The position numbers and the translations under genes are program-made. Below are positions 34,877 to 52,700 of a DNA stretch of 64,000 bases, one piece after another. Location of the stretch: the IMG/VR virus record IMGVR_UViG_3300021057_000274, positions 124,001-188,000 of that record, one strand, 5' to 3'. A model generated the notes under the pieces. That model did not search any database, was not told the DNA's origin, and saw nothing but the letters and a program-made list of their open reading frames with translations. Numbering within the stretch: the stretch's first letter is position 1; every line of letters starts with the position of its first letter.

Positions 34877-35278
34877 TTACTCCGGCTTCTCTGGTTTGTC
34901 TTTCTTGTCTTCCTTCTTCGTCGGCTCTGGCGTCGGAAGAGTTTGCCCGCCCGTAAACTTCTTGTCAAGGAAGCCACGGAACCACTTTCCGAAGCCCTCG
35001 ACGCCTGCGATGAAGAGGAGCCAGAGACCGAAGAGCTCCCAGCCCAGACTCAACATGTAAGCGTACCAGCCGATGAAGAGCGTCGAGAAGACGATGCCGA
35101 CACAGATCCCGAGCTTGTTCGCGTCACCGTATTGCTTTCCGTCAGCTCCGCGACTTGAGAAGAAGTGCCACCACTCGATCGGGTTTTCGGGGTCGTTGAT
35201 GACTCGCACGAGCCCCCAGACAAAGACGAGGAGCAAGACTACTCCCATGATCGCTTCTAGTTCTAACGTCAGTTCCAT
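34877..35278 (-). CDS. Putative holin
   Basis: Three TM segments, charged C-terminal tail, upstream of the spanins. Confidence 0.55.
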   Translation of the reverse strand: MELTLELEAIMGVVLLLVFVWGLVRVINDPENPIEWWHFFSSRGADGKQYGDANKLGICVGIVFSTLFIGWYAYMLSLGWELFGLWLLFIAGVEGFGKWFRGFLDKKFTGGQTLPTPEPTKKEDKKDKPEKPE

Positions 35279-37287
35279 TATGCGTATCTGATCCAGATGT
35301 CGCCGTCGACTCCGCCTGAGGGGCCGCTGGTGGAGACCGTCTTAGCCGAGTTGCCCCAGAGGGTCGCGTTGTTCGCGTTCGTCGCTGTCGTTGCGTTGTT
35401 CGCGTTCGTCGCCGTGGTAGCCGTCGTCGCCGTGTCAGCGTTGCCTTGTAGCGCTCCGATGAAGGTGGTCGCAGTAACGTTACGGGCCGCAAAGTCGCCG
35501 TTGTTGTCACGGAGCACGATCTTATTAGCGGTGTTGGTGGAGACCGCCTCGATCGTCGCACTGTTTTGCTGGCCGGTGATGCTGCTTGCGGTGGTGGCCG
35601 TCGTCGCGGACGTAGCCGTCGTCGCGGACGTAGCCGTCGTCGCGTTGCCTTGCAACGCCCCGATGAAAGTCGTCGCTGTGACGATGCGAGCGGCGAAGTC
35701 GCCGTTGCTGTCACGGAGCACGATCTTGTTAGCGGTATTGGTAGAAACCGCCTCGATCGTCGCGCTGTTTTGCTGATTCGTGATCGTCGACGCGGTGGTC
35801 GCCGTCGTCGCGTTGCCCGTAACGTTGCCCGTGACGTTGCCGGTCAAGTTGCCGACGACGTTGCCCGTGACGTTGCCAGTGAGAGGCCCGAGGAACACGG
35901 TCGCGGTGATCTCACGAGCTGCGAAGTCTCCGTCGGCGTCACGAAGGACGATGCGATCGCCGATGTTATTTGCGGTCGCGGTGATCGTCGCGCTGTTGGC
36001 TTGGCCGACGATGCTCACCGCTGACATCGTCTGATCTGCCCAACCCACGCGAATCGCGGCGCCGTGTGAGGATGTAAAGTTCCAACGCGACCCGTCCCAC
36101 GCGATCGAGTTGGTGTAGGTGGACCCGTGCGACGTCGTGTACAAGTTGGTCGCGTTCGTCGCGGTAGTCGCGGTAGTCGCCGTGGTAGCAGTGGTCGCGG
36201 TGGTCGCGGTGGTCGCGGTGGTAGCTGTAGTCGCGGTAGTCGCCGTGGTAGCTGAGGTGGCGTTCCCCGTGAGCGCTCCGACGAACGTGGTCGCTGTAAC
36301 CACGTTCGCTGAAAAGTCACCGTTGCTGTCTCGCAGAACGATGCGGTTTGCGGTGTTGGTCGACGTCGCGACTATCGTCGCGCTGTTCGCTTGATTGGTG
36401 ATGGTACCAGCCGTAGTTGCGGTGGTCGCGGAAGTCGCCGTGGTAGCCGTCGTCGCGGTCGTTGCGGTGGTAGCGTTAGTCGCGTTAGTGGCATTAGTTG
36501 CGTTAGTCGCATTGGTAGCATTCGTCGCAAAGTTGACCCGGGTCGGGCCGATGGGACGCCACCTCAGAGTCGTGCCGTCGTATCGTACGGTGAACGACTC
36601 GGCGGCGGCGATCGCAAAGTCCTCAGAGCCGTTGAGAGCGAAGCGGTTAGCCGCGGTCGAGTTGGTGCTCTCGTTCTTGAGCACGATCGGGAACGAGCCG
36701 ATGTTGTGGATGATCAAGACCCGCTCAGGCGTCGTCGGCACGATGCCCGTGATGTCACGGCTGGCGTCAGTCGAGACGCGCAAGATGTTAGCTGTATCGA
36801 GGCCTGTAGGGTTGTAATTGTTTTGATTACCCGTGATCTGGGCCGGCGAGATGACCTCAGGGAGCGTGAAGAGGGCGACCTGAGACTCGACGGCTACCCA
36901 GTTTCCACCGTTGTCATAGACCTTGAGAACGTCATTGACCGTGTCATACCAGAGGTCGCCAGAGTAGTGGGTTCCAGTCGGCTCGGCTCCAGCGTCGATC
37001 CTGCGATACGCGAGGTCGTTCCACGCAGCTGTGTGGTAGACGTAGAGGCGCTTGTCGCTCGACTTGAACCAGAGCTGTCCGGTGGTCGGGGCGGCTGGAG
37101 CGTTCGCCGAGGCCGAGTGCTCGAGCATCCGGATCAAATTTTCCTGGAGCTTCTCGCCCCAGTTTGCTACGCCCTTTCCTGTGAGGGTCAGTGACGTCGA
37201 CGTAGTGTCGACGGTGCGGGCGGAGAGCACAAACGGGGGCTTGAGCCCGTCGTCTGACCAATTCAGGGTATAGTTGTTGGTGACCAC
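35278..37287 (-). CDS. Tail fibre protein 1
   Basis: N-terminal module shared with fibre 2; NAT/TAT repeats; four IVLRDxxGDF modules; GTG 37287 inferred as start. Confidence 0.85.
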   Translation of the reverse strand: MVTNNYTLNWSDDGLKPPFVLSARTVDTTSTSLTLTGKGVANWGEKLQENLIRMLEHSASANAPAAPTTGQLWFKSSDKRLYVYHTAAWNDLAYRRIDAGAEPTGTHYSGDLWYDTVNDVLKVYDNGGNWVAVESQVALFTLPEVISPAQITGNQNNYNPTGLDTANILRVSTDASRDITGIVPTTPERVLIIHNIGSFPIVLKNESTNSTAANRFALNGSEDFAIAAAESFTVRYDGTTLRWRPIGPTRVNFATNATNATNATNATNATNATTATTATTATTATSATTATTAGTITNQANSATIVATSTNTANRIVLRDSNGDFSANVVTATTFVGALTGNATSATTATTATTATTATTATTATTATTATTATTATNATNLYTTSHGSTYTNSIAWDGSRWNFTSSHGAAIRVGWADQTMSAVSIVGQANSATITATANNIGDRIVLRDADGDFAAREITATVFLGPLTGNVTGNVVGNLTGNVTGNVTGNATTATTASTITNQQNSATIEAVSTNTANKIVLRDSNGDFAARIVTATTFIGALQGNATTATSATTATSATTATTASSITGQQNSATIEAVSTNTANKIVLRDNNGDFAARNVTATTFIGALQGNADTATTATTATNANNATTATNANNATLWGNSAKTVSTSGPSGGVDGDIWIRYA
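35380..36530 (-). repeat. Tandem 9-nt (TAT/NAT tripeptide) repeats and four ~45-aa module repeats in fibre 1
   Basis: Visible in translation; two modules nearly identical in DNA (~35460-35580 and ~35660-35775). Confidence 0.9.
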
Positions 37288-37291
37288 ACGG

Positions 37292-37297
37292 TATTTA
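37292..37297 (-). promoter_or_regulatory. Late promoter core TAAATA, 4 nt before GTG
   Basis: Direct reading. Confidence 0.65.
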
Positions 37298-37314
37298 TCT
37301 CCGTGAGGACTCAC

Positions 37315-38406
37315 CTACTCGATGTAGTATTTCCTCGTGAAAAAGTTAGGAGACGACTCAAGACCAGCTCTTAGGCACCTAGCGTATCCCTCTCTCAAGA
37401 TCTTGGTCCACCTAGTGATCACCTCTTCGTGTTGCTTTTTCGTGACCCAGCGATCCCAGTCTTGGAGATAACTAGTCCCCGTGAACTTTTCACATAACCC
37501 TCCGCGCACCGTCCACCCAGGATACAGCCACTCATCTAAGGAGCTGAACGAGACAGACGCGCCGTACTTTGAGCGAACGACCCACTTCGAGCTAGTGATA
37601 GACGGATCCACGAACCCAGAGTGAAATCGATCAAGATTTTCCCTTACGACGCTGCACTGCTTGATCAAGATCGGCGCCGCCTCGGGGTCCCAGTAAAACA
37701 AGACCTGATCGAAGGGGAGAGTTAGCTCGTTCCTCTTCGTGTAGAGATGGTTGTCTGAGAGGGCAAAGAAGTATCTCTTGTTAGAGGATTGAAGGATCGT
37801 CTTATCATGCCCCCAGATCACCGCAACTCTCCTGCCAGAGTCAGCGAGCTTTCGATATCTCTCGTCACAATAGAGCCAGTGGCCGCGCCTGAGCGGATGA
37901 CTAAACGTTGAGGGTGATGAGAAATAACCCTCTAGAGGATGCTTGACGTTTCGATAATAGTCGATCAGCACTTGCCGGCTATCGATCAAGGTATAGATCG
38001 TCGCTGGATGTTTAGCTTGATAAGCTTCTACGTCATGAGCAGCTGTTTCAAAGATCTCTCGGCTCAGCAGCGAGGAGCGATCATCGGTGAACCCGACGTC
38101 ATGATAGCTGACGATCTCATCGATCGGGAGATTCGCTTTGTCAAACGATCGTAAGACGTTCCAGCTGTCAGCGCCGCCAGAATAGCAGAGGATCAGATAG
38201 TCATACTTCTCTCTTAGCTGGCGTACGCGATCTTCATAGAGCGAAGTCAGAGGGAGAGGAGACGGCAGCTGCCAATTTTGGCTGAGCCAGAAGCTGTCGT
38301 TCCAGTGAAACGTAACTTGGTCTCTAAATTGCACTCGCTCAAGCGCTTCTAGCTTGTTAGAGTAGAACTTCTCGCCAGCTCGATAGAGACCGTAAGCGTC
38401 GTTCAT
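37315..38406 (-). CDS. PP-loop (adenine nucleotide alpha-hydrolase-like) protein, copy 1
   Basis: ILCYSGGADSWNV; paralog of 38403; ATG 38406 overlaps the upstream stop. Confidence 0.8.
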   Translation of the reverse strand: MNDAYGLYRAGEKFYSNKLEALERVQFRDQVTFHWNDSFWLSQNWQLPSPLPLTSLYEDRVRQLREKYDYLILCYSGGADSWNVLRSFDKANLPIDEIVSYHDVGFTDDRSSLLSREIFETAAHDVEAYQAKHPATIYTLIDSRQVLIDYYRNVKHPLEGYFSSPSTFSHPLRRGHWLYCDERYRKLADSGRRVAVIWGHDKTILQSSNKRYFFALSDNHLYTKRNELTLPFDQVLFYWDPEAAPILIKQCSVVRENLDRFHSGFVDPSITSSKWVVRSKYGASVSFSSLDEWLYPGWTVRGGLCEKFTGTSYLQDWDRWVTKKQHEEVITRWTKILREGYARCLRAGLESSPNFFTRKYYIE

Positions 38407-39491
38407 TCGATGAAATAGGGTCGTGAGGAGAAGATCGGAGATGAGACGCCAGCCTTCTTGTAATAATTGGCGGCCATCTTGACCACGGTTGCCCACTTTT
38501 GTACCAGAGGATCGCTGAGGTGATCAAGAACCCAGAAATCTTGCTCAGAGAGAAAGGGAGAACCTCCGAACCGCCCCTCTGAAAAGGTTGCTGGATTCCA
38601 CCCGTAGAGCAGAGCGTTGATCGTCGTGAACGAAACCCGATGCCCTGTCTTAGACCGCTGAAAAGCTACCTTCTTCGCTTTAAGATTGATCGGATAAGGG
38701 TCTATGAATTTACCCGGCAAGCGATCTAAGAAGCTCTTGACCTGGTGACAACTCTTGATCAAGAGAGCAGGAAGGTCCGTAGAAAAGTAAAAGAACTCAT
38801 CGGTGACGGGAAGGTGGCTCTTGGCGTAAGCTTGTGAGATGTAGTCGATGAACTGAAAGCAATAGCGTCCGTCAGTGATCTTGAGATGTACCTTGTCAAA
38901 GCCCCAGAGCAAGCATACCCTCTTTCCAGACTCTAGCAGCTTCTGGTACCTATCTACGCCGTGCATGAAACACCCGCCCCTGATCGGTGACAAGGGACTG
39001 ACGGGAGAGACGTAGTATCCAGAAAGTAACTCTTCAGCGCTCGTTCGAGCCCAAACGTCTAGCAAGAGCGGCTTGGCGTCGATCAACGTAAAGCGGCTGT
39101 TGGGAACCCGCTTCACGTAATCTAGAGCTACCGGTTCGGCTACCGTGAAGATCTCTGAGCTAGCTTTTGAGAGACGATCACCTGTAAAGCCGTAGTCATG
39201 GTAGCTGACGATCTCATCAAGAAAGATGCCTGCGTCGTCAAAAGTTTTTAAGACGTTCCAGCTGTCAGCGCCGCCAGAGTAAGCTAAAATGATGTAGTCG
39301 TACTTGCTTCGAAGCTGTTCAGCTCTAGCGCGATAGAGCTCCCTGAGAGGAACGTCTGGGGGTGCTAGCCAATCTTGCTTGGCCCAGATCTCGTCTTGAA
39401 AGTAAAACTTCGGTGCAGTCCCCCTTGCGGCGTCGATCGCTTCAAACTTGTTTCGAAAGAGCTTCTCGCCGACGAGATAACCGCTGATCAC
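38403..39491 (-). CDS. PP-loop protein, copy 2
   Basis: ILAYSGGADSWNV; LLWGFDK. Confidence 0.8.
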   Translation of the reverse strand: MISGYLVGEKLFRNKFEAIDAARGTAPKFYFQDEIWAKQDWLAPPDVPLRELYRARAEQLRSKYDYIILAYSGGADSWNVLKTFDDAGIFLDEIVSYHDYGFTGDRLSKASSEIFTVAEPVALDYVKRVPNSRFTLIDAKPLLLDVWARTSAEELLSGYYVSPVSPLSPIRGGCFMHGVDRYQKLLESGKRVCLLWGFDKVHLKITDGRYCFQFIDYISQAYAKSHLPVTDEFFYFSTDLPALLIKSCHQVKSFLDRLPGKFIDPYPINLKAKKVAFQRSKTGHRVSFTTINALLYGWNPATFSEGRFGGSPFLSEQDFWVLDHLSDPLVQKWATVVKMAANYYKKAGVSSPIFSSRPYFIE

Positions 39492-40426
39492 TCAGGTTGA
39501 ATGCCAGCGGCGGTGATCTGCTTTTGCCAAGTCGCTCTCTCCTCACTGAGGACCCGACGCGCGTGAGAGAGATCTCCGCCGCGATCAACGATTCCTAGAG
39601 CATCTAACCGGTTTGACACCGTAGCCATCATGTTGACGATCTGAGCGTCTCGATTCAACTTTCTAAGCTGATCTTCGGTCATCACCGCTGGAGCGGTGAT
39701 GACCATCCAACCTGCTCCGTGAAAGCCTGGAATGACCTCTGATAAAGCTTGCGTCGAGGGGTACTTTTCGATCCTCTTTCTAGTAGCAGCCGCGACTACC
39801 TTCATCTTTCCTGCTTCTACGTGAGCTCTCACGAACGCTTCTCCGTCGATGAACCCATCGATTCGACCAGCAACGACGTCTAGAATTCCGTTCGACGTGC
39901 TCTGCCCGGTGTAAGGGATGAAGTAGATCTCACCTCCCACGGTGCGCGCAAACGCGTTCAGCGCGATGTGTGGCAAGTTGTTCATGTTGCTGACGCCGAT
40001 CGAGAGCTTGTTCGGTTTCATTTTGATATAGCTGATCAGCTCTCTCAGGTCGTTGACAGGCACGTTCTGCCCGACCGCTACTACGTTCGTAAACCAGCCG
40101 ACGCTGAACACCGGCGTAAGCTCCGTGTCGGGGTCATAGGGAAGTTTCTTGTAAACTAACTTGTTGAGAACTAGCGAGGTCGATGACCCCAACAAGATCG
40201 TGTCGTCATCAGCTCTCGCCGCCGCAAGAGCTCCGGGAATTCCCGCCGCGCCTGGGCGATTGATGACGGCCACAGGTTTCTTGTAGAGATCACCCAGCCC
40301 TGCTGCATATACCCTCGCGATGACGTCGGTGACCGTGCCTGGAGCGCCCGGCACGATGATCTTTAGAGCTTGCGCGCTTGCAGCTTGCGTGATCACTAGG
40401 AGCAGAATTAAGAGAAGCTTGTTCAT
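39488..40426 (-). CDS. Bug/TctC tripartite tricarboxylate transporter substrate-binding protein
   Basis: Signal peptide; IIVPGAPG..DVIAR...VINRPGAAG; YDP..ELTPV; W..QITAAGIQPE. Confidence 0.9.
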   Translation of the reverse strand: MNKLLLILLLVITQAASAQALKIIVPGAPGTVTDVIARVYAAGLGDLYKKPVAVINRPGAAGIPGALAAARADDDTILLGSSTSLVLNKLVYKKLPYDPDTELTPVFSVGWFTNVVAVGQNVPVNDLRELISYIKMKPNKLSIGVSNMNNLPHIALNAFARTVGGEIYFIPYTGQSTSNGILDVVAGRIDGFIDGEAFVRAHVEAGKMKVVAAATRKRIEKYPSTQALSEVIPGFHGAGWMVITAPAVMTEDQLRKLNRDAQIVNMMATVSNRLDALGIVDRGGDLSHARRVLSEERATWQKQITAAGIQPE

Positions 40427-40776
40427 TTCAACAACCCTTCGAGGGGATCAGCCATGGGTTCGGCTTGAGGCTGCATTACTTCGACCTTAAATGACTTTCC
40501 GACCGTCTCGGCGTAATCGCTCGGGATCGTCATCTCTCTTCGAAGCTCTTCACGAGCAAGCGCTTCAACGGGACAACTAACGTTGAGGAGTTCCTTCATC
40601 TTCTCCATGGAGACGAGCTTCCCCTCATAGTCGAGCGGGATGTCATACGACCACGGCCCCACCCACCACGTCGGCTGACCGGTTTCGTCGACCGCATCGG
40701 CGTAAAAATAGCGGGCTTCTAAGCGAAGCCTGGCGACATCAACATGAGTGATCTGGTACTTGATTTCTCTGGACAC
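40423..40776 (-). CDS. Hypothetical protein, possibly a fibre assembly chaperone
   Basis: Coupled within the cassette; position downstream of fibre genes. Confidence 0.5.
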   Translation of the reverse strand: MSREIKYQITHVDVARLRLEARYFYADAVDETGQPTWWVGPWSYDIPLDYEGKLVSMEKMKELLNVSCPVEALAREELRREMTIPSDYAETVGKSFKVEVMQPQAEPMADPLEGLLK

Positions 40777-41596
40777 GATCTTGAATCCACTTAGAGAGAG
40801 GAATCGAAAATTTTCGCTGGAACAGCTTATTTTGAGGCAATCTTATCATGGACCTGTTCCAATAGATCTTTTCACGTGGGGACAAACCAAACCGTTCTTG
40901 ATAAACGTGCTTCTTGGCCTCACCGAAATTTTTATATCTAAGCCAGATCGGGTCTAAGACCCACGAGTTAAAGAGCTCCGTAGACCAAAAGAAGAAGTGC
41001 GGTGTCCCCTCGATTCCGTAGTGCATCCTGAGCTTATACTCGCTGTAGAAGATCTCATACTCAACGAGGTACCACGCACGGTCGTATTCGAACTCTGGAA
41101 TTCCACCCATGATCAAAACTTTATCTCGATTCTCTAAGATAGATTTAAAGATAGGTAAAACTGACGCCGCTCCGCACTGAAACTGATCCATGAGCTTCAA
41201 CGCCGTCGTGCTTCTTGACCAATCTTCAAAGTCATACGACTCGATCTTGTAATCTAGAGAATTCTGATCAATGAACCGTCTGGCGTAACGAAGCTCCTCC
41301 CAGTTCACGCCCTTGGTGTCATGCAGAACGACAACCTTGAACGGAACATTAAGCTGTTGAAACGCCCACACTACGGCTTCAGAGTCAAGACCCCCGCTGT
41401 AGTAGACGTAGAGCTGCTCACCGTGGTAGCGCTCAGCGAGCTCACGAGCAGCATTTAGAGTTTCGGTCTTAAGGTCTAAGAGCTTGCGACGTACCGGCAG
41501 AGCGTCGAAGGTAAAGCGATCGTCGATCTTGGTGCTGTAGGTCCAGGGGCGATCGTTGTAACCGAAGACGACAGAGCCGTCACAAAATCTTACCAC
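40739..41596 (-). CDS. PP-loop protein, copy 3 (divergent)
   Basis: VYYSGGLDSE; AT-rich. Confidence 0.75.
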   Translation of the reverse strand: MVRFCDGSVVFGYNDRPWTYSTKIDDRFTFDALPVRRKLLDLKTETLNAARELAERYHGEQLYVYYSGGLDSEAVVWAFQQLNVPFKVVVLHDTKGVNWEELRYARRFIDQNSLDYKIESYDFEDWSRSTTALKLMDQFQCGAASVLPIFKSILENRDKVLIMGGIPEFEYDRAWYLVEYEIFYSEYKLRMHYGIEGTPHFFFWSTELFNSWVLDPIWLRYKNFGEAKKHVYQERFGLSPREKIYWNRSMIRLPQNKLFQRKFSIPLSKWIQDRVQRNQVPDHSC

Positions 41597-42354
41597 GAGA
41601 GGATGACACGTCCGTTTCCGCCTGGTCCGCCAGATCCGCCATTCGAGGATCCTCCTGCACCCCCGCCACCTCCGCCGCCCGATCCGTCAGCGCCAGAGCT
41701 GCCAGGATTTCCCGGGTTTCCGCCGCCGGAGCCTCCCCCGCCGCCTCCTGCATAAAAGTTGCCGCCGCCGTCGCCGCCCTCGAACGCGCCGTCGGTGTTT
41801 CCAGCTTCACCGGCGTTGCCGTTGGGGGATCCGCCTGCTCCCCCAGCTCCAGGTAATACCGATTCCCCGCTAGGCCCAGGCGCGCCGCCTCCTGCACCTC
41901 CGGTAAACGTCAATCCTCCCAAAACGGTATTTCCACCTGCGTTGCCAGCGGTGCCTTGAGTAGTATTACCAGTGCCTGGGCCTCCAGAACCCCCTGTCCC
42001 GATCGTGATCGAGATCTGCTGCCCGGGAGTTACCGAGATGTTTCCTGAGCCAAAGCCACCCGAGCCCCCGCCGCCCGCGCCGACTCCGACCGACGGCGCA
42101 GCTGCTCCGCCGCCCCCTCCGCCCGCGCCAGACGCTGAGTACGCGATGCTATAGATTCCCGGGGGAACGGTGAAGGTATAGCCGCCTGGAGACTGATAGT
42201 TAGCGCTACCGGTGTCTGGAAATGACTGTTGCCAGGTCCCGCTCACCTTGTTCCACACCCCGGTGACCGCGCGCCACGTGCCTGAGACCTTGATGAAGAC
42301 CTCTTGGACTTGACGCCAGGTGCCGCTGACCTTGACGTAGAGCTCTCTAGGCAT
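41590..42354 (-). CDS. Glycine-rich tail fibre tip / adhesin-like protein
   Basis: Triple KVSGTW repeat; GGGGG tracts; directly after fibre 2. Confidence 0.75.
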   Translation of the reverse strand: MPRELYVKVSGTWRQVQEVFIKVSGTWRAVTGVWNKVSGTWQQSFPDTGSANYQSPGGYTFTVPPGIYSIAYSASGAGGGGGGAAAPSVGVGAGGGGSGGFGSGNISVTPGQQISITIGTGGSGGPGTGNTTQGTAGNAGGNTVLGGLTFTGGAGGGAPGPSGESVLPGAGGAGGSPNGNAGEAGNTDGAFEGGDGGGNFYAGGGGGGSGGGNPGNPGSSGADGSGGGGGGGAGGSSNGGSGGPGGNGRVILSW

Positions 42355-44759
42355 TACGCGTACCTAAACCAGACGTCATTGTCAGAGCCGCCGGACGGAC
42401 CGCCCGTCGACACGAGACGTGCTCCGCCGGCCCACCTGGTCGAGTCAGCCGCGGAGCCAGTGATGTTGATGCCGTAGGTTCCGCCGTTATTGTAGACGCC
42501 GTTCGTCACCGTTCCAGCGTTTCCGGTGACGCTGATGCTCCAGGTGCCACTGTTGATGACGACAGACGTGCCCTGGACGTTCGGCGTCGCGCCGAAGGTG
42601 GCGACGTTGTTCTCGAGGTTGATCGCGAGCGGCCAGTAGCCACCCAGCGACTGTTCCGTGATCGAGTCAGCCCCGTTGGCTCGAAGCACGTAGAACGTAC
42701 CTCCGTCAACGCGAAGCATGCCAGATCTATGCTCGGTGTCGCGCAAGAAGACCGTCGGAGCGGCGTTTCTGATGTAGAGGTTATCAACCGCGTCGGTGGC
42801 GTTTTTCATGAGGCCGCTAGCATGAATTCCGTCGACCGTGTCAGCGTCTAGCCCGGATCCAGGGCCGTCATTTCCAGCTGACCAGATCGTGCCGCCGTTC
42901 GCTGTCCAGGTGCCGTTCTCGAGGAAGCCGCCTGTGTTGTTGCCTGAGTTCGCGCGCACGACCCAGTTGCCTAGGTTGTTCTGGAGACCGAACTCCTGGC
43001 TAGTGTTACCGAAGAGAGCCCCCGCGATCGTGCCTGATCCGCCCGCCGTGACGCGCACCCTGACGCCAGCGTTGCCCGCGTAGGCGACGTTCCAGTATCC
43101 CCCGTCAGAGAACCACGTGTTCGTGGTCGCGTCGTTCTTCAATCCCTCGCCGCTCGTGGTGTTCCTGAACCAGTTGGTTGCGATCACCTCGTCGAACGTC
43201 GGCGAGGACGTCGTCTTGACCGCCTGGTTGAGGTAATCGGTGAACTGCGCGCCGTCCCAGAGGTCAGCGTCGAGACCCGAGCTAGCTCCGTCGTTACCGT
43301 CATGCCAGAGCTGGCGCCAGGACTTGAGATCGGTCCCCCAGCCTGACCTGAAGTAGGGCCCGCTCTGGTTGACGTCTCCGCTTGACGCGTGGTGTGAGAC
43401 GTAGAGCTGGAAGCGTGAGTCAGTCGACGAGAGGTTGATTAAGCCGCCCCAAGCGTAGCCGACCGGGCCGTTGTTGTCACGCTGTGAGACGCCGTTGTAG
43501 GTGCCCGGCGTTTGAATCATCGTGTCGACCGCGGTTGCGTCGGCGCCCCGATTCTTCCGCATGAACACCGTCTCATTGAGACCGTCGAGCAAGTCAGCGT
43601 CGAGACCAGAGCCAGATCCGTCGTTCGAGGAGGTCCAGATGCCAGCGGCGCTCAACACGTGCGCGAGTGAGGCCTTGCGCACCTTGTTGTCAGTGCCGTT
43701 CGTCACCATGACCTGAGAGACGGTCGGGTTCTCGTTGTTCGCCGTTTCGGCGAACACCGCGTTGACGAAGATGTCCTTGTTCGCGTCGCGCAACACGATG
43801 CGGTTAGCGGTTGCGGTCGTCGTTGCTTCGATCGTCGCGCTGTTCTGTTGGCCAGAGATCGCGTTAGCTAGGGTCGCGTTGGTGGCGTTTGTAGCCGTCG
43901 TCGCGTTACCCGCGTTCGTCGCAAACGCGGCCGTCGTCGCGTTGGTGGCGTTCGTCGCGTTGGTGGCGTTCGTCGCGTTGGTGGCGTTCGTCGCGTTGGT
44001 GGCGTCGGTCGCGAAGTTGACGCGGTTCGGGCCCCAGAGACGCCACCTTGACGAGGCTCCGTCATAGCGCAGGGTGAGGGTCTCGCTCTGAGAGATCGTC
44101 ACGTCGGCGTTCAGCGCGAACCGGTTAGCCGCCGTCGAGCTCGCGTTCTCGTTCTTGAGCACGATCGGGTTCGTGCCCACGTTGTGAATCATCACGACGC
44201 GTCCCTGCACTCCTGACGCTAGACCCGTGATGTCGCGCGACGCGTTCGTAGACAAGCGAAGAACGTTGCTAGTGCTGAAGTTCGCCGGGTTGTAGTTGTT
44301 TTGATTCGCGGTGATCTGCGGAGGGGTAAGCTCCTCAGCGATCAAGAAGAGGTCAACGGCCTTCTCGAGAGGTACCCAGGTCGTCGCGTTCGTGTAAACC
44401 TTGAGGACGTCTGAAGCGGTGTCGTACCAGAGATCGCCCGGGTAGTTCGGCCCAGTCGGCGTCGTGCCAGAGTCGATGCGGCGATTCGCTAGCTCGTTCC
44501 AGGTATCGGTGTGATAGACGTAGAGCTTCTTGTCGGTCGACTTGAACCAGAGCTGGCCGAGGGTCGCGTGAGTCGGAGAGACGTCAGACGCGAAGTGCTC
44601 CAAGAGGCGAATCAGGTTTTCCTGGTGCTTCTCTCCCCAGTTAGACACTCCCCGCCCGGTCAGCGTCAACGACGTTGACGTCGAGTCAACGGTGTTTGGT
44701 GCTAGGGTAAACGGCGCCTTGAGGACGTCGTTCTGCCAGTTCAGGGTATAGGTGGTCAC
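42354..44759 (-). CDS. Tail fibre protein 2
   Basis: Shared N-terminal module; GSGLDADLLDG-type motifs; C-terminal GGPSGG..DVWFRYA. Confidence 0.88.
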   Translation of the reverse strand: MTTYTLNWQNDVLKAPFTLAPNTVDSTSTSLTLTGRGVSNWGEKHQENLIRLLEHFASDVSPTHATLGQLWFKSTDKKLYVYHTDTWNELANRRIDSGTTPTGPNYPGDLWYDTASDVLKVYTNATTWVPLEKAVDLFLIAEELTPPQITANQNNYNPANFSTSNVLRLSTNASRDITGLASGVQGRVVMIHNVGTNPIVLKNENASSTAANRFALNADVTISQSETLTLRYDGASSRWRLWGPNRVNFATDATNATNATNATNATNATNATNATTAAFATNAGNATTATNATNATLANAISGQQNSATIEATTTATANRIVLRDANKDIFVNAVFAETANNENPTVSQVMVTNGTDNKVRKASLAHVLSAAGIWTSSNDGSGSGLDADLLDGLNETVFMRKNRGADATAVDTMIQTPGTYNGVSQRDNNGPVGYAWGGLINLSSTDSRFQLYVSHHASSGDVNQSGPYFRSGWGTDLKSWRQLWHDGNDGASSGLDADLWDGAQFTDYLNQAVKTTSSPTFDEVIATNWFRNTTSGEGLKNDATTNTWFSDGGYWNVAYAGNAGVRVRVTAGGSGTIAGALFGNTSQEFGLQNNLGNWVVRANSGNNTGGFLENGTWTANGGTIWSAGNDGPGSGLDADTVDGIHASGLMKNATDAVDNLYIRNAAPTVFLRDTEHRSGMLRVDGGTFYVLRANGADSITEQSLGGYWPLAINLENNVATFGATPNVQGTSVVINSGTWSISVTGNAGTVTNGVYNNGGTYGINITGSAADSTRWAGGARLVSTGGPSGGSDNDVWFRYA
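43941..44006 (-). repeat. Perfect 18-bp tandem repeat (about 3.6 copies)
   Basis: GTTGGTGGCGTTCGTCGC units; encodes (ATN)n. Confidence 0.9.
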
Positions 44760-49400: not shown

Positions 49401-49741
49401 TCAGTCAGGTCAGAGGTAGCCGGATCGTGGCCGTGCGGAGTCTGTCCGAAGTTGAGAGAGTCGTTGAGCGAGAAGCGAGGGAAGATCGCCCACGGGATGT
49501 TGAAGGTCAGGTCGCTCGCGTCGCCGGTCATGATCCGAACTAGGCTCTCGCCCCCTCGGTCAGCCGCGTCCCAGATTCCCTGCATCATCACCTCGGTGAA
49601 CTGCTTCTCCTGCACGTTGACGTGGATGAGCTCCTCGTTGAAGAAGAGCTCTGAGGTCAGGTCGTTCAGCTTCGAGTGGTAGGGCTTGACGTCGTTGAAG
49701 TACCCGACCAGCGACTGGAGCAGCTTAGTGTTGTCGGTCAC
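46496..49741 (-). CDS. Large virion protein with two LamG/concanavalin-like domains
   Basis: YFNDVKPYHSKL N-terminus; THWVRVS..IG and WLCIMGS..IGA..FNGAIGEL patterns. Confidence 0.7.
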   Translation of the reverse strand: MTDNTKLLQSLVGYFNDVKPYHSKLNDLTSELFFNEELIHVNVQEKQFTEVMMQGIWDAADRGGESLVRIMTGDASDLTFNIPWAIFPRFSLNDSLNFGQTPHGHDPATSDLTDLNTNGIPDSEQTWTGDQSSSHFNGDDEIAVAARVSDLRVEITQSFLNGTVYEYEYSIHFTIDAAEAIAFGFQDSAVKVFVGETEYLTFTRLGSNFSVDGLTGTYTIPNNEVAMVPGGLDSSFYSLFAAYRQLQPVSVYWQDTRRYRVPHHQGCRVRVDGVAAVFQTDFVVDRSRSFIQFLPNSILGNSGYDAKKIDVNLFKADRLFLRFLSPFDFGVTRNFDEGGYDDLSYDNEDENPDTDDADRFTITVVDASDETSTVTFYNSIADASLRKGSLTVRNIYNTSADGDVWEVTAIGPWKFQVQQTVPALGPLYYASFKIPFDNGKIAFTIDGDWTPYYLLTDPGSYAGLLGQAHDVSDFLVNLDLKTQHGVLTDPVPSNHAPMQLIQFGKIKKAVNEHGEYYTFVLDNIPKKNTYVELRIEQNAQYNPHVSVTATDFLSIVQILQAEEEIEVQGLYSPTKNFHHLLLPGTDGNHVTSPTGRRHDVTGDIQISAHLKLDDWTPGTDQTIISKYETGQLSYKMYITTTGRIGFKWSPDNVAEHSFTSDLLSFANNSTHWVRVSLENDASGVGGTLKFYKSEDGSLWDLIGSPTLGAINSSIYKSTARVAIGVSHVNTDKLAGKVYQVDVRGSISDEDEIYLMDGADFDGTVYMKSNDPIPGSVDSKLGTFVAWVRLDGSLIGPGTQQNVFSAADTPGSSTPKGLQLSYASSRWTVRAFNTAGTVILNVSTPATYNSGAAWLCIMGSFDLSDTAKRKLYVGDDSELSLITTYTDDTIDYTVNDWVIGARSDGQNTFNGAIGELLFWPNVYYDWGIEANRRKVITEDGKPVSPFKLKGLIADLSTPVIHLHLDEGEAPANYRLNHGREGDFFITGSLTNASTSPSDGWGANFNALDLRPGAASGVSQKTGTTWTVNTSGSPAAEIIQERVGEWAYESEKFVQTGSLMQADYMQADYAIVDNVDPALVTTE

Positions 49742-52700
49742 GAGACGATCCTGACGTCGTTGAGCGAGACGTACGACGTCTTGAAGAAGTCCTTGAGCTC
49801 GGGAGTCTTAGCGAGCGAGTCCTCGAGGACCTCAAAGAAGATCTCGCTCAGCTGCTTCGGGTTGGCGAAGCGCCAGAGGTCGGCCATGAGCTTCTTGATC
49901 TCCGCCGTCGTCGACAGATAAGTGTCGAGCTTGTTGATGTCGAACCCCTCGTATGAGATGTAGTGTGGAACCTTGGCTCCGTCGACGAGCCGGGTCACCT
50001 GTGTATTTAAGATCGTGTACTTGACGGTCTCCCTCGCGATCTTCGGGTCAACCATGATCTGCTCTCCGGACAAGCCGTAGCGGATCGATGACTCGTTGCG
50101 CTGGTCATAGATCTCGCGCACGCTGAACGGGAGCGGATCACCGACCTGCGACTCGCCGCAGAGGGAGTCAGTCAAGGTGTCCCAGAGCTTCTTTGGAATT
50201 CGAGTCGGTTGAAACTTCCGTAGCAAGATCCACTCGGTGTGGACGTTCTTGAGCTCAGCCGTCGGGTCGCTCCGCAGAGTTTGGTCAAGCGTCAAGCGGA
50301 GCTTGTACGAGTCGTTCTCCTTGACGTGCCGACGCAGTCCTTGAACCGACAGGATCGCGTATCGGTTCGGGCGGCCGTCAAGCTGGTTGTACCACTTGAG
50401 CCCCTGAGGCACCGCGTAGAGCCCATCGTGGTTGGTCAGCAGCGCCGCGATCTGATTTACCGCGAGCGCCTTGCCGCGCGCCGGGCTGCGCTTCTCCTTG
50501 ACCCAGAAGTAGTAGACGTTGACGCTCAATCCGCTCACCTCATCGCGGCGCAGCTCGCGCACGTGCGGGAAGTCATGCTTGTACTGCACTAGCTTGTACG
50601 GATCCGTGTCGGCGACGTCAGGGTCAAACTCGAGGTCCTCGGTCGTAACCTCAGCCGGAACTAGCTTGAAGGTGATCACGTCACCCTCTGAGGCGATCGC
50701 CTCATCGGTAACTTGTACAAAGGCGTCTACACCGTTCTGGGAAACCGTCCAGTCCGCGTGCCTGATCATCGTACCGTTTAGATATAGGTAACCCCGTTCC
50801 TTTACATCCGCCGCAAGCATGGAAGCGTACGTAAACTTGTCCTCGAGGAAATCGTTCAGCGTGTCGCTGCCGGTGACGAAGTACTTGGCCTCTCTGAAGT
50901 CGTCAACCACCTTCGTCCAGGTCGTCCAGGTGGAGCGATACGGGGTGTAATCGGCGCCTCCAAACCAGGTCCAAGGGTCGGCCATGTGGCTAGAGATGTC
51001 GCTCGCGAGGTCGATCAAGAAGTCGTCGACCTCCACCCACTCTCCCGCGACGGGAGAGTACGGGTTCAAGTTCTTGTTCGTAACCAGGTTCGGGTTTTCG
51101 ATCGGATCATTCCAAGCGATCCACCCGTTAGTGGTCAAGTCGGCGGTGGCGTCCAGGGTAGTGTAGGTTGTCACTCCGTCGACGAACGCGATCGGCGAGA
51201 AGACCGTGACCGTGCTGCGGAGGTAGATGTCGTGGGCCGCGTTGCCGATCGCGGTCGCCATCGTTGACTTCCGCTGCGCCTCGGACGGTACTCCGCCGAT
51301 CGGGGCTGGCCACGTGTCGGCGTGGCCGTACGTGACCGTGTAGAAGATCTTGATCCCGAGCTGGTCGAAGAAGTAAGAGTCCTTGGTGCCGGCCTGGACA
51401 GGCGTGTCATGCACCTCGATGATCTGGTTCTTTCCCGACGGAGCCTGGAGCTTGATGTAGTCGACCCCGCCGTCCGTGAAGTTAGACAGGTTGTAGTCAC
51501 CTAGCTCGCCGTTGAACGCGTAGGTCTGGTCATCGATCTCGAGCGTGAACGTGGTGACGAAGTTAGAGGACGCGAACGTGGGGCCACCCGTGTAGGCCGC
51601 GGCGGTTCCAACCGAGATCGTTGACGACTCCGAGGTGACCTCTGCCATCCCGAAGATGCGGGCGAGGTTCGCGTCGGTCTTCGTCGTCGAAGTGTAGATC
51701 GCGCCTGCGATCTTCGTCCCCCTCACGACGCCGTAATCCTCAAACTTGCCAGCGTTGACGACGAGGGTGCCGTGGCCGTTCGTCAAGAAGGTCTTAAGCT
51801 TGGCTGGCTGATACGCGAGAAACTTGATCACTCCGTCCGTCGGGTTCTTGACCTTCCAAGCGACGACGCGCTGCCACCAGACCCGATCTCTCGTGACCAG
51901 GTAGCTCTGCGCGACCTCACCCTCGGTCTCGCTCCCGTACTCCGCCGGCGGCACCTCAGACCTCACCCACTCGTAGACGTTTACCTTCGAGAAGTCAGCG
52001 AGAGCGCCCCAGTGACGAAGACGATCATTGACGTCCTCGAAGATCTTCGAGTCATGGTACGGCTTCCAGTCTAGGTCGGCGGTGTCCCACCACAGCTTGC
52101 CGACCTGCTTCTCTCCCCAGGTCCTGAGCGGATCGCTGTTTCGGCCCAAGCTCGTTTGGTTGTACTTCGCGGGATCCGCCGCCTGCTCGTAGCTGATCAG
52201 CGAGTGCGCCTCCGGGTGGTGGTGCCCGCGCGCGGGGTCCCACCAGATGATGTCGCTGCGCACGAGATCACCGGTCTTGTAGTTGTAGAGAGCGACGGGT
52301 GAGTATTGCTCGAAGTTCGGCCCGTAAGCAACGACCTTGATGATTCGATTGAGGAGAGCGACGTCGTTGATCTTGATCGTTGAGGCGTTGACGCGCTCGA
52401 ACTTCGCGGTCGAGTACTCAGCTGGATCTGTGGCGGCGACGTAGTCCCCGCGCTCTCGATAGACGCCGCTGCTCTCGGTCTCGTCAGCGAGCTCGACGTT
52501 GATCAGCTCGAAGCAATCAGCTCTCACCGGATTTCCGCTCTTGTCGGTGATCGAGTAGAGCTTGTCGAGAGAGTCGGGAACGATCGTCATCTCAGCGAGG
52601 ACCTTGAGCTGAAACGACGTGAGCGCCTTGAGGTCGTCGTACTTGTGCCACCGTGTCTCGTCGTCAGGGAAGACGATGATCATGTTGGTCGCGTCAAAGA

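What the first reader, a model, noticed from the sequence alone, without database searches (positions are those of the whole stretch)
37315..41596. Three PP-loop enzymes plus a Bug/TctC receptor embedded in the tail-fibre operon: candidate new system
Seen: an AT-richer ~4.3 kb block of five genes, each overlapping its neighbour, continuing the fibre 2 / Gly-rich transcript and ending just before fibre 1's own promoter. Three genes carry SGGxDS, and two are full-length paralogs. Known: PP-loop enzymes (AsnB, QueC, TilS/TtcA, lasso cyclases) adenylate carboxyl or carbonyl groups for amide or thio transfer, and Bug/TctC proteins bind carboxylates in the periplasm. I know of no described pathway with this combination. 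Inference: a cassette that chemically modifies fibres, the host receptor or envelope (exclusion), or tRNA/nucleotides using a captured carboxylate.
Basis: partly seen in the sequence, partly recalled or inferred. Interest (0 to 1): 0.75.

Follow-up and report, generated by a model that had tools for sequence, protein, structure and literature searches.

The report
Phage carboxylate-receptor plus amide-synthetase cassette
A soil jumbo phage carries, between its two tail-fibre genes, a borrowed block encoding a secreted carboxylate-binding protein and three ATP-using enzymes that resemble asparagine synthetase; the same combination turns up in many uncultivated phages and has not been described, but what it acts on is unknown.

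Summary
Five minus-strand genes at 37315-41596 overlap each other by 4-38 nt. This is the lowest-GC 4.3 kb of the window (51.4% against 57.2%). Three genes carry SGGxDS, D and E are 38% identical paralogues, and C is a full-length Bug/TctC receptor with a signal peptide.

The PP-loop proteins form two remotely related families, which I call PPL (D, E) and PPA (A). Neither has a Pfam, PHROG or NCBIfam model, and neither appears in 50,697 cultured phage records. PPL is almost absent from prokaryote genomes (3 MAG contigs) but has 377 matches in IMG/VR. Confident models place both families closest to the synthetase domain of asparagine synthetase B, beta-lactam synthetase and carbapenam synthetase. 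They lack the glutaminase domain and have no conserved cysteine.

PPL sits directly beside a secreted TctC, a DctP-like protein or TctA in 35 of 92 distinct cases, usually with a 4-nt overlap. PPA+TctC+PPL sets recur.

In three related contigs the cassette again follows fibre and Gly-rich genes. Most distant copies are not near recognisable fibre genes. The nearest cultured relative, RsoM2USA, lacks the cassette.

The best reading is a mobile accessory module: TctC captures a carboxylate for import through host TctAB, and the PP-loop enzymes adenylate and amidate it. Substrate and purpose are unknown. It is a new variant of a known kind, of moderate to high interest.

The parts
40739..41596 (-). 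A: 285-aa PP-loop enzyme of the PPA family (YYSGGLDSE). It resembles the asparagine-synthetase synthetase domain and has no glutaminase domain.
   Evidence: Model pLDDT 95.3. Best folds are AsnB Z 14.7, human ASNS 14.1, beta-lactam synthetase 13.9 and carbapenam synthetase 12.3. 415 representative proteins match at E<=1e-3 and 78 at E<=1e-10. It has no Pfam or PHROG hit of its own. Other family members weakly hit QueC, Asn_synthase and NAD_synthase.
40423..40776 (-). B: 117-aa protein of unknown function.
   Evidence: No Pfam, PHROG or NCBIfam hit. The only homologue found is a 123-aa protein at 36% identity in L089, at the same place in the cassette. The atlas search gave only weak leads.
39488..40426 (-). 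C: Bug/TctC-family periplasmic carboxylate-binding protein with a Sec signal peptide (MNKLLLILLLVITQAASAQA).
   Evidence: Pfam TctC E=3.6e-36, full length. Best solved relatives by sequence are the chain of 5oei (1.3e-36; the adipate-binding AdpC, named from my own knowledge, as the entry title does not say so), terephthalate-binding proteins, and 2dvz (BugE, also from my own knowledge). It is 30-34% identical to Burkholderiales Bug proteins and 50% to P0210 in the related phage contig L089. Atlas structure TM is 0.87 to bacterial Bug proteins.
38403..39491 (-). D: 362-aa PP-loop enzyme of the PPL family (AYSGGADSW).
   Evidence: Model pLDDT 90.9. Best folds are AsnB Z 12.6, ASNS 11.9, beta-lactam synthetase 10.9 and carbapenam synthetase 9.6, against 7-8 for LarE, NadE and TilS. 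58 protein clusters and 377 IMG/VR stretches match. All 11 invariant family positions are kept.
37315..38406 (-). E: 363-aa PPL paralogue of D (CYSGGADSW). The start was reassigned to the ATG at 38406.
   Evidence: 38% identical to D, E=3e-81. 50% identical to the single PPL of L089. All invariant positions are kept.
41590..42354 (-). Context: Gly-rich fibre-tip or adhesin-like protein directly upstream. It shares the cassette's low GC3.
   Evidence: Pfam Gly_rich_2 E=3e-12. PHROG 863 'tail fiber assembly' and 12796 'tail fiber protein'. GC3 0.62. A Gly-rich gene also precedes the cassette in L089, L088 and the 235-kb JGI contig.
42354..44759 (-). Context: fibre 2 (801 aa).
   Evidence: Mosaic tblastn matches to annotated tail-fibre and virion structural proteins. 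Tail and structural PHROG hits.
35278..37314 (-). Context: fibre 1 (678 aa ORF; likely start is a GTG near 37287).
   Evidence: Its N-terminus is paralogous to fibre 2. The sequence at the junction is shown.

Best explanation
The block is a horizontally acquired accessory cassette inserted into the fibre operon of a roughly 389-kb soil jumbo phage. It is one instance of a module that recurs widely among uncultivated phages.

The module's core is one or more glutaminase-less, asparagine-synthetase-like PP-loop enzymes. They belong to two virus-restricted families: PPL (D and E) and PPA (A). The core is coupled to a secreted solute receptor of the tripartite tricarboxylate transporter type (C).

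Proposed mechanism:
1. C is exported by its signal peptide and binds a di- or tricarboxylate in the periplasm.
2. C hands the ligand to the host's own TctAB permease. This phage encodes no TctA.
3. In the cytoplasm, A, D and E each use ATP to adenylate a carboxyl group of that compound or a derivative. The acyl-adenylate is then resolved with ammonia or an amine to give an amide.

The module therefore captures and chemically commits an external carboxylate for the phage's benefit.

Shown here: gene content, fold class, intact PP-loop motifs, signal peptides, recurrent translationally coupled adjacency, virus restriction, and the compositional signature of acquisition.

Inferred: the enzymes are active, the chemistry is amide formation, TctC's ligand is the enzymes' substrate, and host TctAB is used.

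Unknown: the substrate and the physiological pay-off.
For: Fold. Both families are closest to the AsnB, ASNS, beta-lactam synthetase, carbapenam synthetase and TsnB9 synthetase domains. Z is 12.6-8.4 for D and 14.7-11.9 for A, above other PP-loop enzymes at 7-10. SGGxDS is invariant in PPL and nearly so (at least 90%) in PPA. Neither family has a conserved cysteine, so Fe-S or persulfide chemistry is unlikely.

Coupling to transport.
- 35 of 92 distinct PPL genes have a TctC, DctP or TctA gene as immediate neighbour, and 43 of 92 have one within two genes. The commonest gap is -4 nt, and both gene orders occur.
- All 35 distinct phage TctC sequences listed have signal peptides.
- Some phages add TctA and a TctC-like protein beside PPL: L041, L045 and L073.
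- The receptor is the variable partner. C is 30-34% identical to Burkholderiales Bug proteins but only 17-24% to other phage TctCs. PPL proteins, by contrast, stay 24-47% identical to D. This fits a receptor that must dock with each host's permease.

Accessory and mobile nature.
- This is the lowest-GC stretch of the window, with low GC3.
- The cassette is absent from the syntenic fibre module of RsoM2USA and from all 50,697 cultured phage records.
- PPL is found in only 3 MAG contigs among 185,579 species genomes, against 377 IMG/VR stretches.
- Distant copies lie among accessory genes: hsp20, clpS, purD, AdoMet decarboxylase, metallophosphoesterase.

Precedent, from my own knowledge: cyanophage PstS is a phage-encoded periplasmic binding protein that feeds a host transporter. 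Viral tctA has been listed as an auxiliary gene of unknown role (PMC4164917).
Against: - No substrate is identified and no activity is shown.
- About half of PPL genes have no adjacent receptor.
- Co-transcription with late fibre genes is odd timing for a nutrient-capture function. It would suit a role in virion or adhesin maturation better.
- In four related contigs the cassette always follows fibre and Gly-rich genes, and the Gly-rich gene shares its GC3. That hints at a functional tie the uptake model does not explain.
- Arrays of up to eight PP-loop paralogues in some phages (L057, L066, L030) look more like a biosynthetic or diversifying system than a simple salvage step.
- Phage DctP-like neighbours lack signal peptides, so not all partner binding proteins are periplasmic.
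- Whether viral TctC genes occur without PPL could not be tested, because the search failed.
Confidence: 0.42

Rival explanations
1. Host-envelope or receptor remodelling. The AsnB-like enzymes amidate carboxyl groups of envelope precursors, such as uronic acids of O-antigen or capsule, or meso-diaminopimelate in peptidoglycan precursors. This would change the surface that fibres recognise, giving superinfection exclusion or preventing progeny from sticking to debris. The secreted TctC would act in the periplasm in the same process.
For: - The genes sit beside receptor-binding genes in this phage lineage. From my own knowledge, receptor-blocking and O-antigen-modifying phage genes typically lie there.
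- Also from my own knowledge, AsnB-family amidotransferases are known to amidate peptidoglycan and O-antigen uronic acids.
- A secreted partner protein is present.
- A's weak best NCBIfam hit is an exopolysaccharide-system amidotransferase (E=0.0016, far below the cut-off).
Against: - No glycosyltransferase, flippase or other envelope gene was found in the cassette.
- This reading gives no role to a TctC receptor, or to TctA in other phages.
- Most distant copies are not near fibre genes.
- The known envelope amidotransferases keep the glutaminase domain, which is absent here.
Confidence: 0.2
2. Virion protein modification. The PP-loop enzymes adenylate a small carboxylate brought in through TctC, or Asp/Glu side chains, and form amide or isopeptide bonds on the Gly-rich adhesin or the fibres. 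This would alter stability or receptor specificity.
For: - Gene order Gly-rich then PP-loop/TctC in four related contigs, with shared low GC3.
- Overlapping genes imply co-transcription with late fibre genes.
- Gly-rich or collagen-like fibre proteins lie within a few genes of PPL in some distant loci: L040, L068, L080.
- PP-loop enzymes can modify proteins. A Cap9-CdnD entry (9nto) appears among the weaker fold matches. Lasso cyclases are AsnB-like (my own knowledge).
Against: - The families mostly occur away from structural genes.
- The nearest cultured relative builds the homologous fibre module without them.
- No leader-peptide, protease or recognition-element partner was found.
- No test of modification was possible.
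Confidence: 0.15
3. Nucleic-acid or nucleotide modification. The enzymes act like TilS, QueC or NadE on tRNA, DNA bases or nucleotide cofactors, for example in deazapurine or NAD-type chemistry.
For: - PPA members weakly hit QueC (19 of 60) and NAD_synthase (10 of 60) profiles.
- These folds appear among matches at Z 7-10.
- Bug27, a TctC relative matched at 2.7e-17, binds nicotinate (my own knowledge).
Against: - AsnB-class folds score clearly higher: Z 12-15 against 7-10.
- There is no conserved Cys or Zn site as in QueC and the thiolases.
- The window has no tRNA genes.
- The Pfam scans of the cassette, its flanking genes and the sampled recurrent neighbours showed no transglycosylase (DpdA/TGT-type) or other base-modification partner.
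Confidence: 0.08

Closest known systems
Asparagine synthetase B, beta-lactam synthetase and carbapenam synthetase (synthetase domains)
   Same: Best structural matches for both families, covering most of each model. They share the PP-loop SGGxDS. The expected chemistry is also shared: an acyl-adenylate formed on a carboxylate, then amide formation.
   Different: - No N-terminal glutaminase domain; only a short beta remnant is left.
- No significant sequence match beyond the PP-loop. hhalign against E. coli AsnB gives probability 2%, and D and E have no Pfam Asn_synthase hit.
- The proteins are 285-363 aa, against about 500-550.
- The families are restricted to viruses.
Bug/TctC solute receptors of tripartite tricarboxylate transporters (for example AdpC, TphC, BugD, BugE)
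   Same: C is a full-length family member with a signal peptide.
   Different: It is phage-encoded, and this genome has no TctA. Its gene is translationally coupled to PP-loop enzymes rather than to a permease or catabolic genes. Its ligand is unknown.
Cyanophage PstS and other phage-encoded transporter components (auxiliary metabolic genes); viral tctA
   Same: A phage supplies a periplasmic binding protein that presumably plugs into a host permease. tctA has been noted on viral contigs (PMC4164917, PMC6359870).
   Different: Here the receptor belongs to the TTT family and is paired with dedicated ATP-dependent enzymes. No function has been shown for either.
Lasso-peptide cyclases and Cap9 (QueC-like) protein-modifying PP-loop enzymes
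   Same: They are PP-loop or AsnB-like enzymes that form amide bonds on peptides or proteins. This would be the mechanism if the fibre-modification reading is correct.
   Different: No precursor peptide, leader protease or recognition-element partner, and no CD-NTase or TGT partner, is present. Fold similarity to Cap9 is weak (Z 6-9).

Membership tests
PP-loop (N-type) ATP pyrophosphatase superfamily | SGGxDS PP-loop at the end of the first strand of a Rossmann-like alpha/beta domain | tested here: met
   The motif is present in A, D and E. It is invariant in the 44-sequence PPL alignment; in the 60-sequence PPA alignment G-G is invariant and S, D, S are at least 90% conserved. Confident models match many PP-loop structures.
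Asparagine synthetase B family (Pfam Asn_synthase plus class-II glutaminase) | Synthetase-domain fold | tested here: met
   AsnB 1ct9 is the top hit: Z 12.6 for D (276 residues aligned) and Z 14.7 for A (242 residues aligned). These stand above other PP-loop folds.
Asparagine synthetase B family (Pfam Asn_synthase plus class-II glutaminase) | Sequence match to the family profile | tested here: not met
   D, E and A have no Asn_synthase hit. 0 of 44 PPL members and 10 of 60 PPA members hit it, and only weakly (best 1e-5). hhalign of the PPL alignment against E. coli AsnB gives probability 2%, covering the PP-loop only.
Asparagine synthetase B family (Pfam Asn_synthase plus class-II glutaminase) | N-terminal Ntn glutaminase domain with Cys1 | tested here: not met
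   The proteins are 285-363 aa. The models align only from AsnB residue 73 (A) or 142 (D) onward. There is no GATase Pfam hit.
tRNA thiolases, LarE and QueC (Cys/Fe-S or Zn-dependent PP-loop enzymes) | Conserved cysteines for an Fe-S cluster, persulfide or Zn site | tested here: not met
   No alignment column has more than 52% Cys in PPL or more than 48% in PPA.
Lasso-peptide cyclase system | Adjacent precursor peptide, leader protease (transglutaminase-like) and PqqD-like recognition element | tested here: not met
   No such Pfam or PHROG domains were found in the cassette or its neighbours. Small precursor ORFs were not searched for specifically.
Bug/TctC solute-binding proteins (PF03401) | Full-length profile match, periplasmic targeting and family fold | tested here: met
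   125.5 bits against a cut-off of 27, covering 272 of 274 profile positions. Signal peptide present. PDB relatives score 1e-36 to 1e-10. TM 0.87 to bacterial Bug models.
Complete tripartite tricarboxylate transporter (TctABC) | TctA permease, and TctB, encoded together with TctC | tested here: not met
   No TctA is found in the 389-kb genome. TctB was not searched for. TctA does accompany PPL in other phages: L041, L045, L073.
Active acyl-adenylate-forming amide synthetase | Carboxylate-dependent ATP to AMP + PPi turnover | not testable with these tools
   This requires enzyme assays.

The most novel reading that the evidence does not exclude
PPL and PPA are virus-specific ligases that attach an imported carboxylate, or form isopeptide links, on Gly-rich tail-fibre adhesins. 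The swappable receptor would determine which compound decorates the virion. This would be a chemical, post-translational route to changing phage adsorption or host range.
Probability: 0.12. Interest if true: 0.9.

Novelty: new variant of a known kind. Interest (0 to 1): 0.6.

Why it matters
Two sizeable enzyme families that are restricted to viruses and have no model in Pfam, PHROGs or NCBIfam are genetically welded to secreted carboxylate receptors in many uncultivated phages from soil and water. Matches number in the hundreds: 377 IMG/VR stretches for PPL and 415 representative proteins for PPA.

If the uptake-and-amidate reading is right, phages reprogramme what their hosts import and how it is committed. 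That would be a new class of auxiliary metabolism beyond phosphate and photosynthesis genes.

If the fibre or envelope readings are right, it would be a new chemical layer of host-range or exclusion control.

Either way the enzymes are tractable. They are small and soluble-looking with confident models, and the receptor offers a direct experimental handle on the substrate through ligand screening.

Tried and rejected
- Sequence searches of D, E and A against Pfam, PHROGs and NCBIfam gave nothing above any cut-off.
- A profile search of PPL against PDB sequences gave no match even at E<=10.
- hhalign of PPL against E. coli AsnB aligned only the PP-loop. Residue-level mapping of AsnB's aspartate-binding residues was therefore not possible.
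- tblastn of A and D against 50,697 cultured phage records gave no match. C gave one weak partial hit.
- The word-indexed homologue search for A found only itself. The exhaustive search was needed to find relatives.
- The predicted D+E heterodimer returned 'no answer' (score 0.00). This is not evidence either way.
- A mirror-tree test of PPL against adjacent TctC gave Mantel r=0.67. The signal comes only from close kin and vanishes for divergent pairs (r=-0.05), so it adds nothing beyond co-inheritance.
- Searches of viral contigs with the broad PPA alignment and with the phage TctC alignment failed for lack of conserved stretches. Whether viral TctC genes occur without PPL is therefore untested.
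- Four literature searches found no description of the pairing.
- The promoter and terminator scan was at chance level.
- Considered and set aside: a thiolation or Fe-S enzyme (no conserved Cys); a lasso-peptide system (no partner genes); a recent capture of C from the host (at most 34% identity to any bacterial protein).

Full report
**What is there.** The window is part of a 389,331-bp viral record that is estimated 98% complete. The window covers bases 124001-188000 of that record. The sequence comes from soil metagenomes. Its 2855-aa protein is 32% identical to a protein of Ralstonia jumbo phage RsoM2USA.

On the minus strand the gene order is as follows:
- fibre 2 (42354-44759)
- a Gly_rich_2 protein (41590-42354)
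- A (40739-41596, 285 aa)
- B (40423-40776, 117 aa)
- C (39488-40426, 312 aa)
- D (38403-39491, 362 aa)
- E (ORF 37315-38496)
- fibre 1 (35278-37314)

E most likely starts at the ATG at 38406. That start overlaps D's stop as ATGA, and the D/E alignment begins there. Neighbouring genes overlap by 7, 38, 4, 4 and 4 nt.

The cassette is the lowest-GC 4.3-kb stretch of the window: 0.514 against a mean of 0.572 (sd 0.018). Its genes have GC3 of 0.57-0.64, against 0.72-0.81 in the flanking phage genes. The Gly-rich gene shares the low GC3. The one exception is a separate promoter for fibre 1, which I did not find. There is only a GGAGA ribosome-binding site and a likely GTG start about 27 nt after E's stop.

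**What the proteins are.** C is a standard Bug/TctC receptor.
- It matches Pfam TctC at 125.5 bits over the whole profile and has a Sec signal peptide.
- Its best solved relatives by sequence are the chain of 5oei (the adipate-binding AdpC, named from my own knowledge), terephthalate-binding proteins, and 2dvz (BugE, also from my own knowledge).
- Its nearest bacterial relatives are Burkholderiales Bug proteins at 30-34% identity.

A, D and E have no hit above threshold in Pfam, PHROGs or NCBIfam. D and E are 38% identical. A is a remote homologue of D and E, with profile-profile probability 98%. I call the D/E family PPL and the A family PPA.

AlphaFold models are confident: pLDDT 90.9 for D and 95.3 for A. 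An exhaustive structural comparison puts both closest to the synthetase domains of the following:

| Solved structure | Z for D | Z for A |
|---|---|---|
| E. coli AsnB | 12.6 | 14.7 |
| human asparagine synthetase | 11.9 | 14.1 |
| beta-lactam synthetase | 10.9 | 13.9 |
| carbapenam synthetase | 9.6 | 12.3 |
| TsnB9 | 8.4 | 11.9 |

LarE, NadE, TilS, QueC, GMP synthase and the PAPS reductases score lower, at Z 6-10.

The models start inside or after AsnB's N-terminal domain, so there is no glutaminase. SGGxDS is invariant in PPL and at least 90% conserved in PPA. No cysteine is conserved in either family. That argues against Fe-S or persulfide chemistry such as that of TtcA, TtuA, MnmA and LarE, and against a QueC-type Zn site. 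At sequence level only the PP-loop aligns with AsnB. These are new families within the superfamily, not AsnB members.

**Distribution.**
- PPL has 58 protein clusters in the large metagenome collection, none carrying a Pfam domain.
- PPL has 377 confirmed stretches in IMG/VR.
- PPL has only 3 hits among the genomes of 185,579 prokaryote species. All three are MAG contigs, one of them binned as Polynucleobacter.
- PPL has no hit in 50,697 cultured phage records.
- The structurally nearest ESM Atlas clusters are 100% viral.
- PPA has 415 representative relatives at E<=1e-3 and 78 at E<=1e-10, and likewise no cultured-phage hit.
- TctC is essentially absent from cultured phages, with one weak partial hit.

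**Recurrence of the association.** I called ORFs in the 80 fetched PPL loci and clustered them.
- The largest cluster is PPL, with 116 members in 78 loci, often as tandem pairs or triplets.
- The second is TctC, with 42 members in 31 loci.
- The third is PPA, with 21 members in 13 loci.

Of 92 distinct PPL genes, 35 have a TctC, DctP-family or TctA gene as immediate neighbour, and 43 have one within two genes. The commonest spacing is a 4-nt overlap, and both gene orders occur. All 35 distinct phage TctC sequences listed carry signal peptides.

Some phages place TctA and a TctC-like protein next to PPL: L041, L045 and L073. Sets resembling the window's recur:
- L097: PPL-TctC-PPA-PPL
- L028 and L038: PPL-x-PPA-TctC-PPL-TctC
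- L088: PPL-TctC-GNAT-PPA-PPL-TctC
- L089: B-like-PPA-TctC-PPL

**The link to fibres.** Three related contigs repeat the window's context.
- L089: fibre, Gly_rich_2, B-like protein, PPA, TctC (50% identical to C), PPL (50% identical to E).
- L088: fibre, Gly-rich, fibre, then PPL-TctC and the rest.
- A 235-kb JGI contig: two Gly_rich_2 genes, PPL, TctC, a 410-aa protein, PPL, then tail sheath about 5 kb on.

A few distant loci have Gly-rich or collagen-like fibre proteins within a few genes of PPL: L040, L068 and L080. Most do not. There the genes sit among hsp20, ClpS, a cytidylyltransferase-like gene, an Rv2179c-type exoribonuclease, metallophosphoesterase, MoxR/CobS-like AAA, PurD, AdoMet decarboxylase, Rieske and desaturase-like genes.

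In one closer relative the pair lies among small early-type genes, with IF3 and Acb1 nearby. RsoM2USA has the homologous fibre N-terminus and module but no PPL, PPA or TctC. The cassette is thus accessory to fibre construction. The fibre operon is a lineage-specific site for it, possibly with the Gly-rich gene as a travelling companion.

**Mechanism.** The best-supported logic is capture followed by commitment.
1. C is exported and binds a di- or tricarboxylate.
2. C uses host TctAB, since this phage genome has none.
3. The cytoplasmic PP-loop enzymes adenylate carboxyl groups and form amides with ammonia or an amine, as AsnB-class enzymes do.

One observation supports a genuine transport role. 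The receptor is the fast-changing or replaceable partner. C is 17-24% identical to other phage TctCs but 30-34% to Burkholderiales Bug proteins. DctP-type proteins or an added TctA take its place in some phages. PPL itself stays 24-47% identical to D across phages. This is what one expects if the receptor must fit each host's permease.

Having three enzymes could mean three carboxyl groups or three successive steps. That is speculation.

Several facts weigh against a simple nutrient-salvage reading:
- late co-transcription with fibres;
- the repeated Gly-rich neighbourhood;
- large paralogue arrays in some phages;
- cytoplasmic DctP-like partners.

I therefore keep envelope or receptor amidation and virion-protein modification as live rivals, and nucleic-acid or cofactor modification as a weak one.

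**Comparison with known systems, and novelty.** The enzymes plausibly work like AsnB, beta-lactam synthetase and carbapenam synthetase, but they fail two membership features of that family: the profile match and the glutaminase domain. C is a true Bug/TctC member. Phage-encoded binding proteins feeding host transporters have a precedent in cyanophage PstS (my own knowledge). Viral tctA has been listed as an auxiliary gene of unknown role (PMC4164917, PMC6359870). I found no description of the PP-loop/TctC pairing.

**Verdict.**
- It is a real, recurrent and undescribed viral module, a new variant of a known kind.
- The substrate and the biological purpose are unknown.
- Confidence in the capture-and-amidate model is about 0.4.
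- Interest is 0.6.

Noticed in passing
window 35278-37314 and 42354-44759: The two fibre proteins share a homologous N-terminal region of about 250 aa. Both contain long period-3 runs of NAT/TAT triplets (NATNATNAT...TATTATTAT), which are also strings of N-x-T sequons. Fibre 2 is a mosaic of pieces matching fibres of unrelated phages.
   Followed up: partly
window 41590-42354: The Gly_rich_2 gene has the same low GC3 (0.62) as the cassette, unlike the fibres on either side (0.77-0.81). This suggests it arrived together with the cassette. Its N-terminus has three 'KVSGTW' repeats.
   Followed up: partly
window 40714-40730 (minus strand): A terminator-like hairpin plus T-run lies just after A's stop codon but inside the B ORF. 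The number of such sites in the region is at chance level.
   Followed up: no
L008, L010, L016, L019, L040, L046, L066 (the f12 genes next to PPL): Phage DctP-family (TRAP) solute-binding proteins adjacent to PPL lack signal peptides, unlike the phage TctCs. They would be cytoplasmic binding proteins.
   Followed up: partly
L057:7900-19176, L066:8670-16295, L030:7860-18880: These are arrays of 6-8 PP-loop genes (PPL plus up to 5 PPA). They are interleaved with AdoMet decarboxylase, a Rieske protein, a fatty-acid-desaturase-like membrane protein and a GNAT, and PurD lies just upstream in L066. They look like a biosynthetic cluster.
   Followed up: partly
L088:10194-13579: Directly after the second PPL-TctC pair come a B12-binding radical SAM enzyme, a ferredoxin and an FAD oxidoreductase.
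   Followed up: no
L017:2985-3611 and other f6 genes (L037, L045, L053, L055, L073): A recurrent protein of about 200 aa sits next to PPL and TctC. It has no Pfam hit, and a language-model search gives only weak leads to 2OG-Fe(II) oxygenase and Asp/Asn hydroxylase.
   Followed up: partly
window 49738-58305: A 2855-aa protein is 32% identical over 88% of its length to a hypothetical protein of Ralstonia phage RsoM2USA. It has weaker relatives in Xanthomonas and Stenotrophomonas jumbo phages, some annotated as virion structural proteins.
   Followed up: no
whole record (G000): IMG/VR classes the 389-kb record as a provirus, although it is a near-complete (98%) jumbo-phage genome. The same contig is about 395.7 kb in other sources.
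   Followed up: no
JGI contig holding P0006 (no DNA held): A closer PPL-TctC pair lies among small early-type genes, together with a translation initiation factor IF3 homologue and an Acb1 (anti-CBASS) homologue.
   Followed up: no
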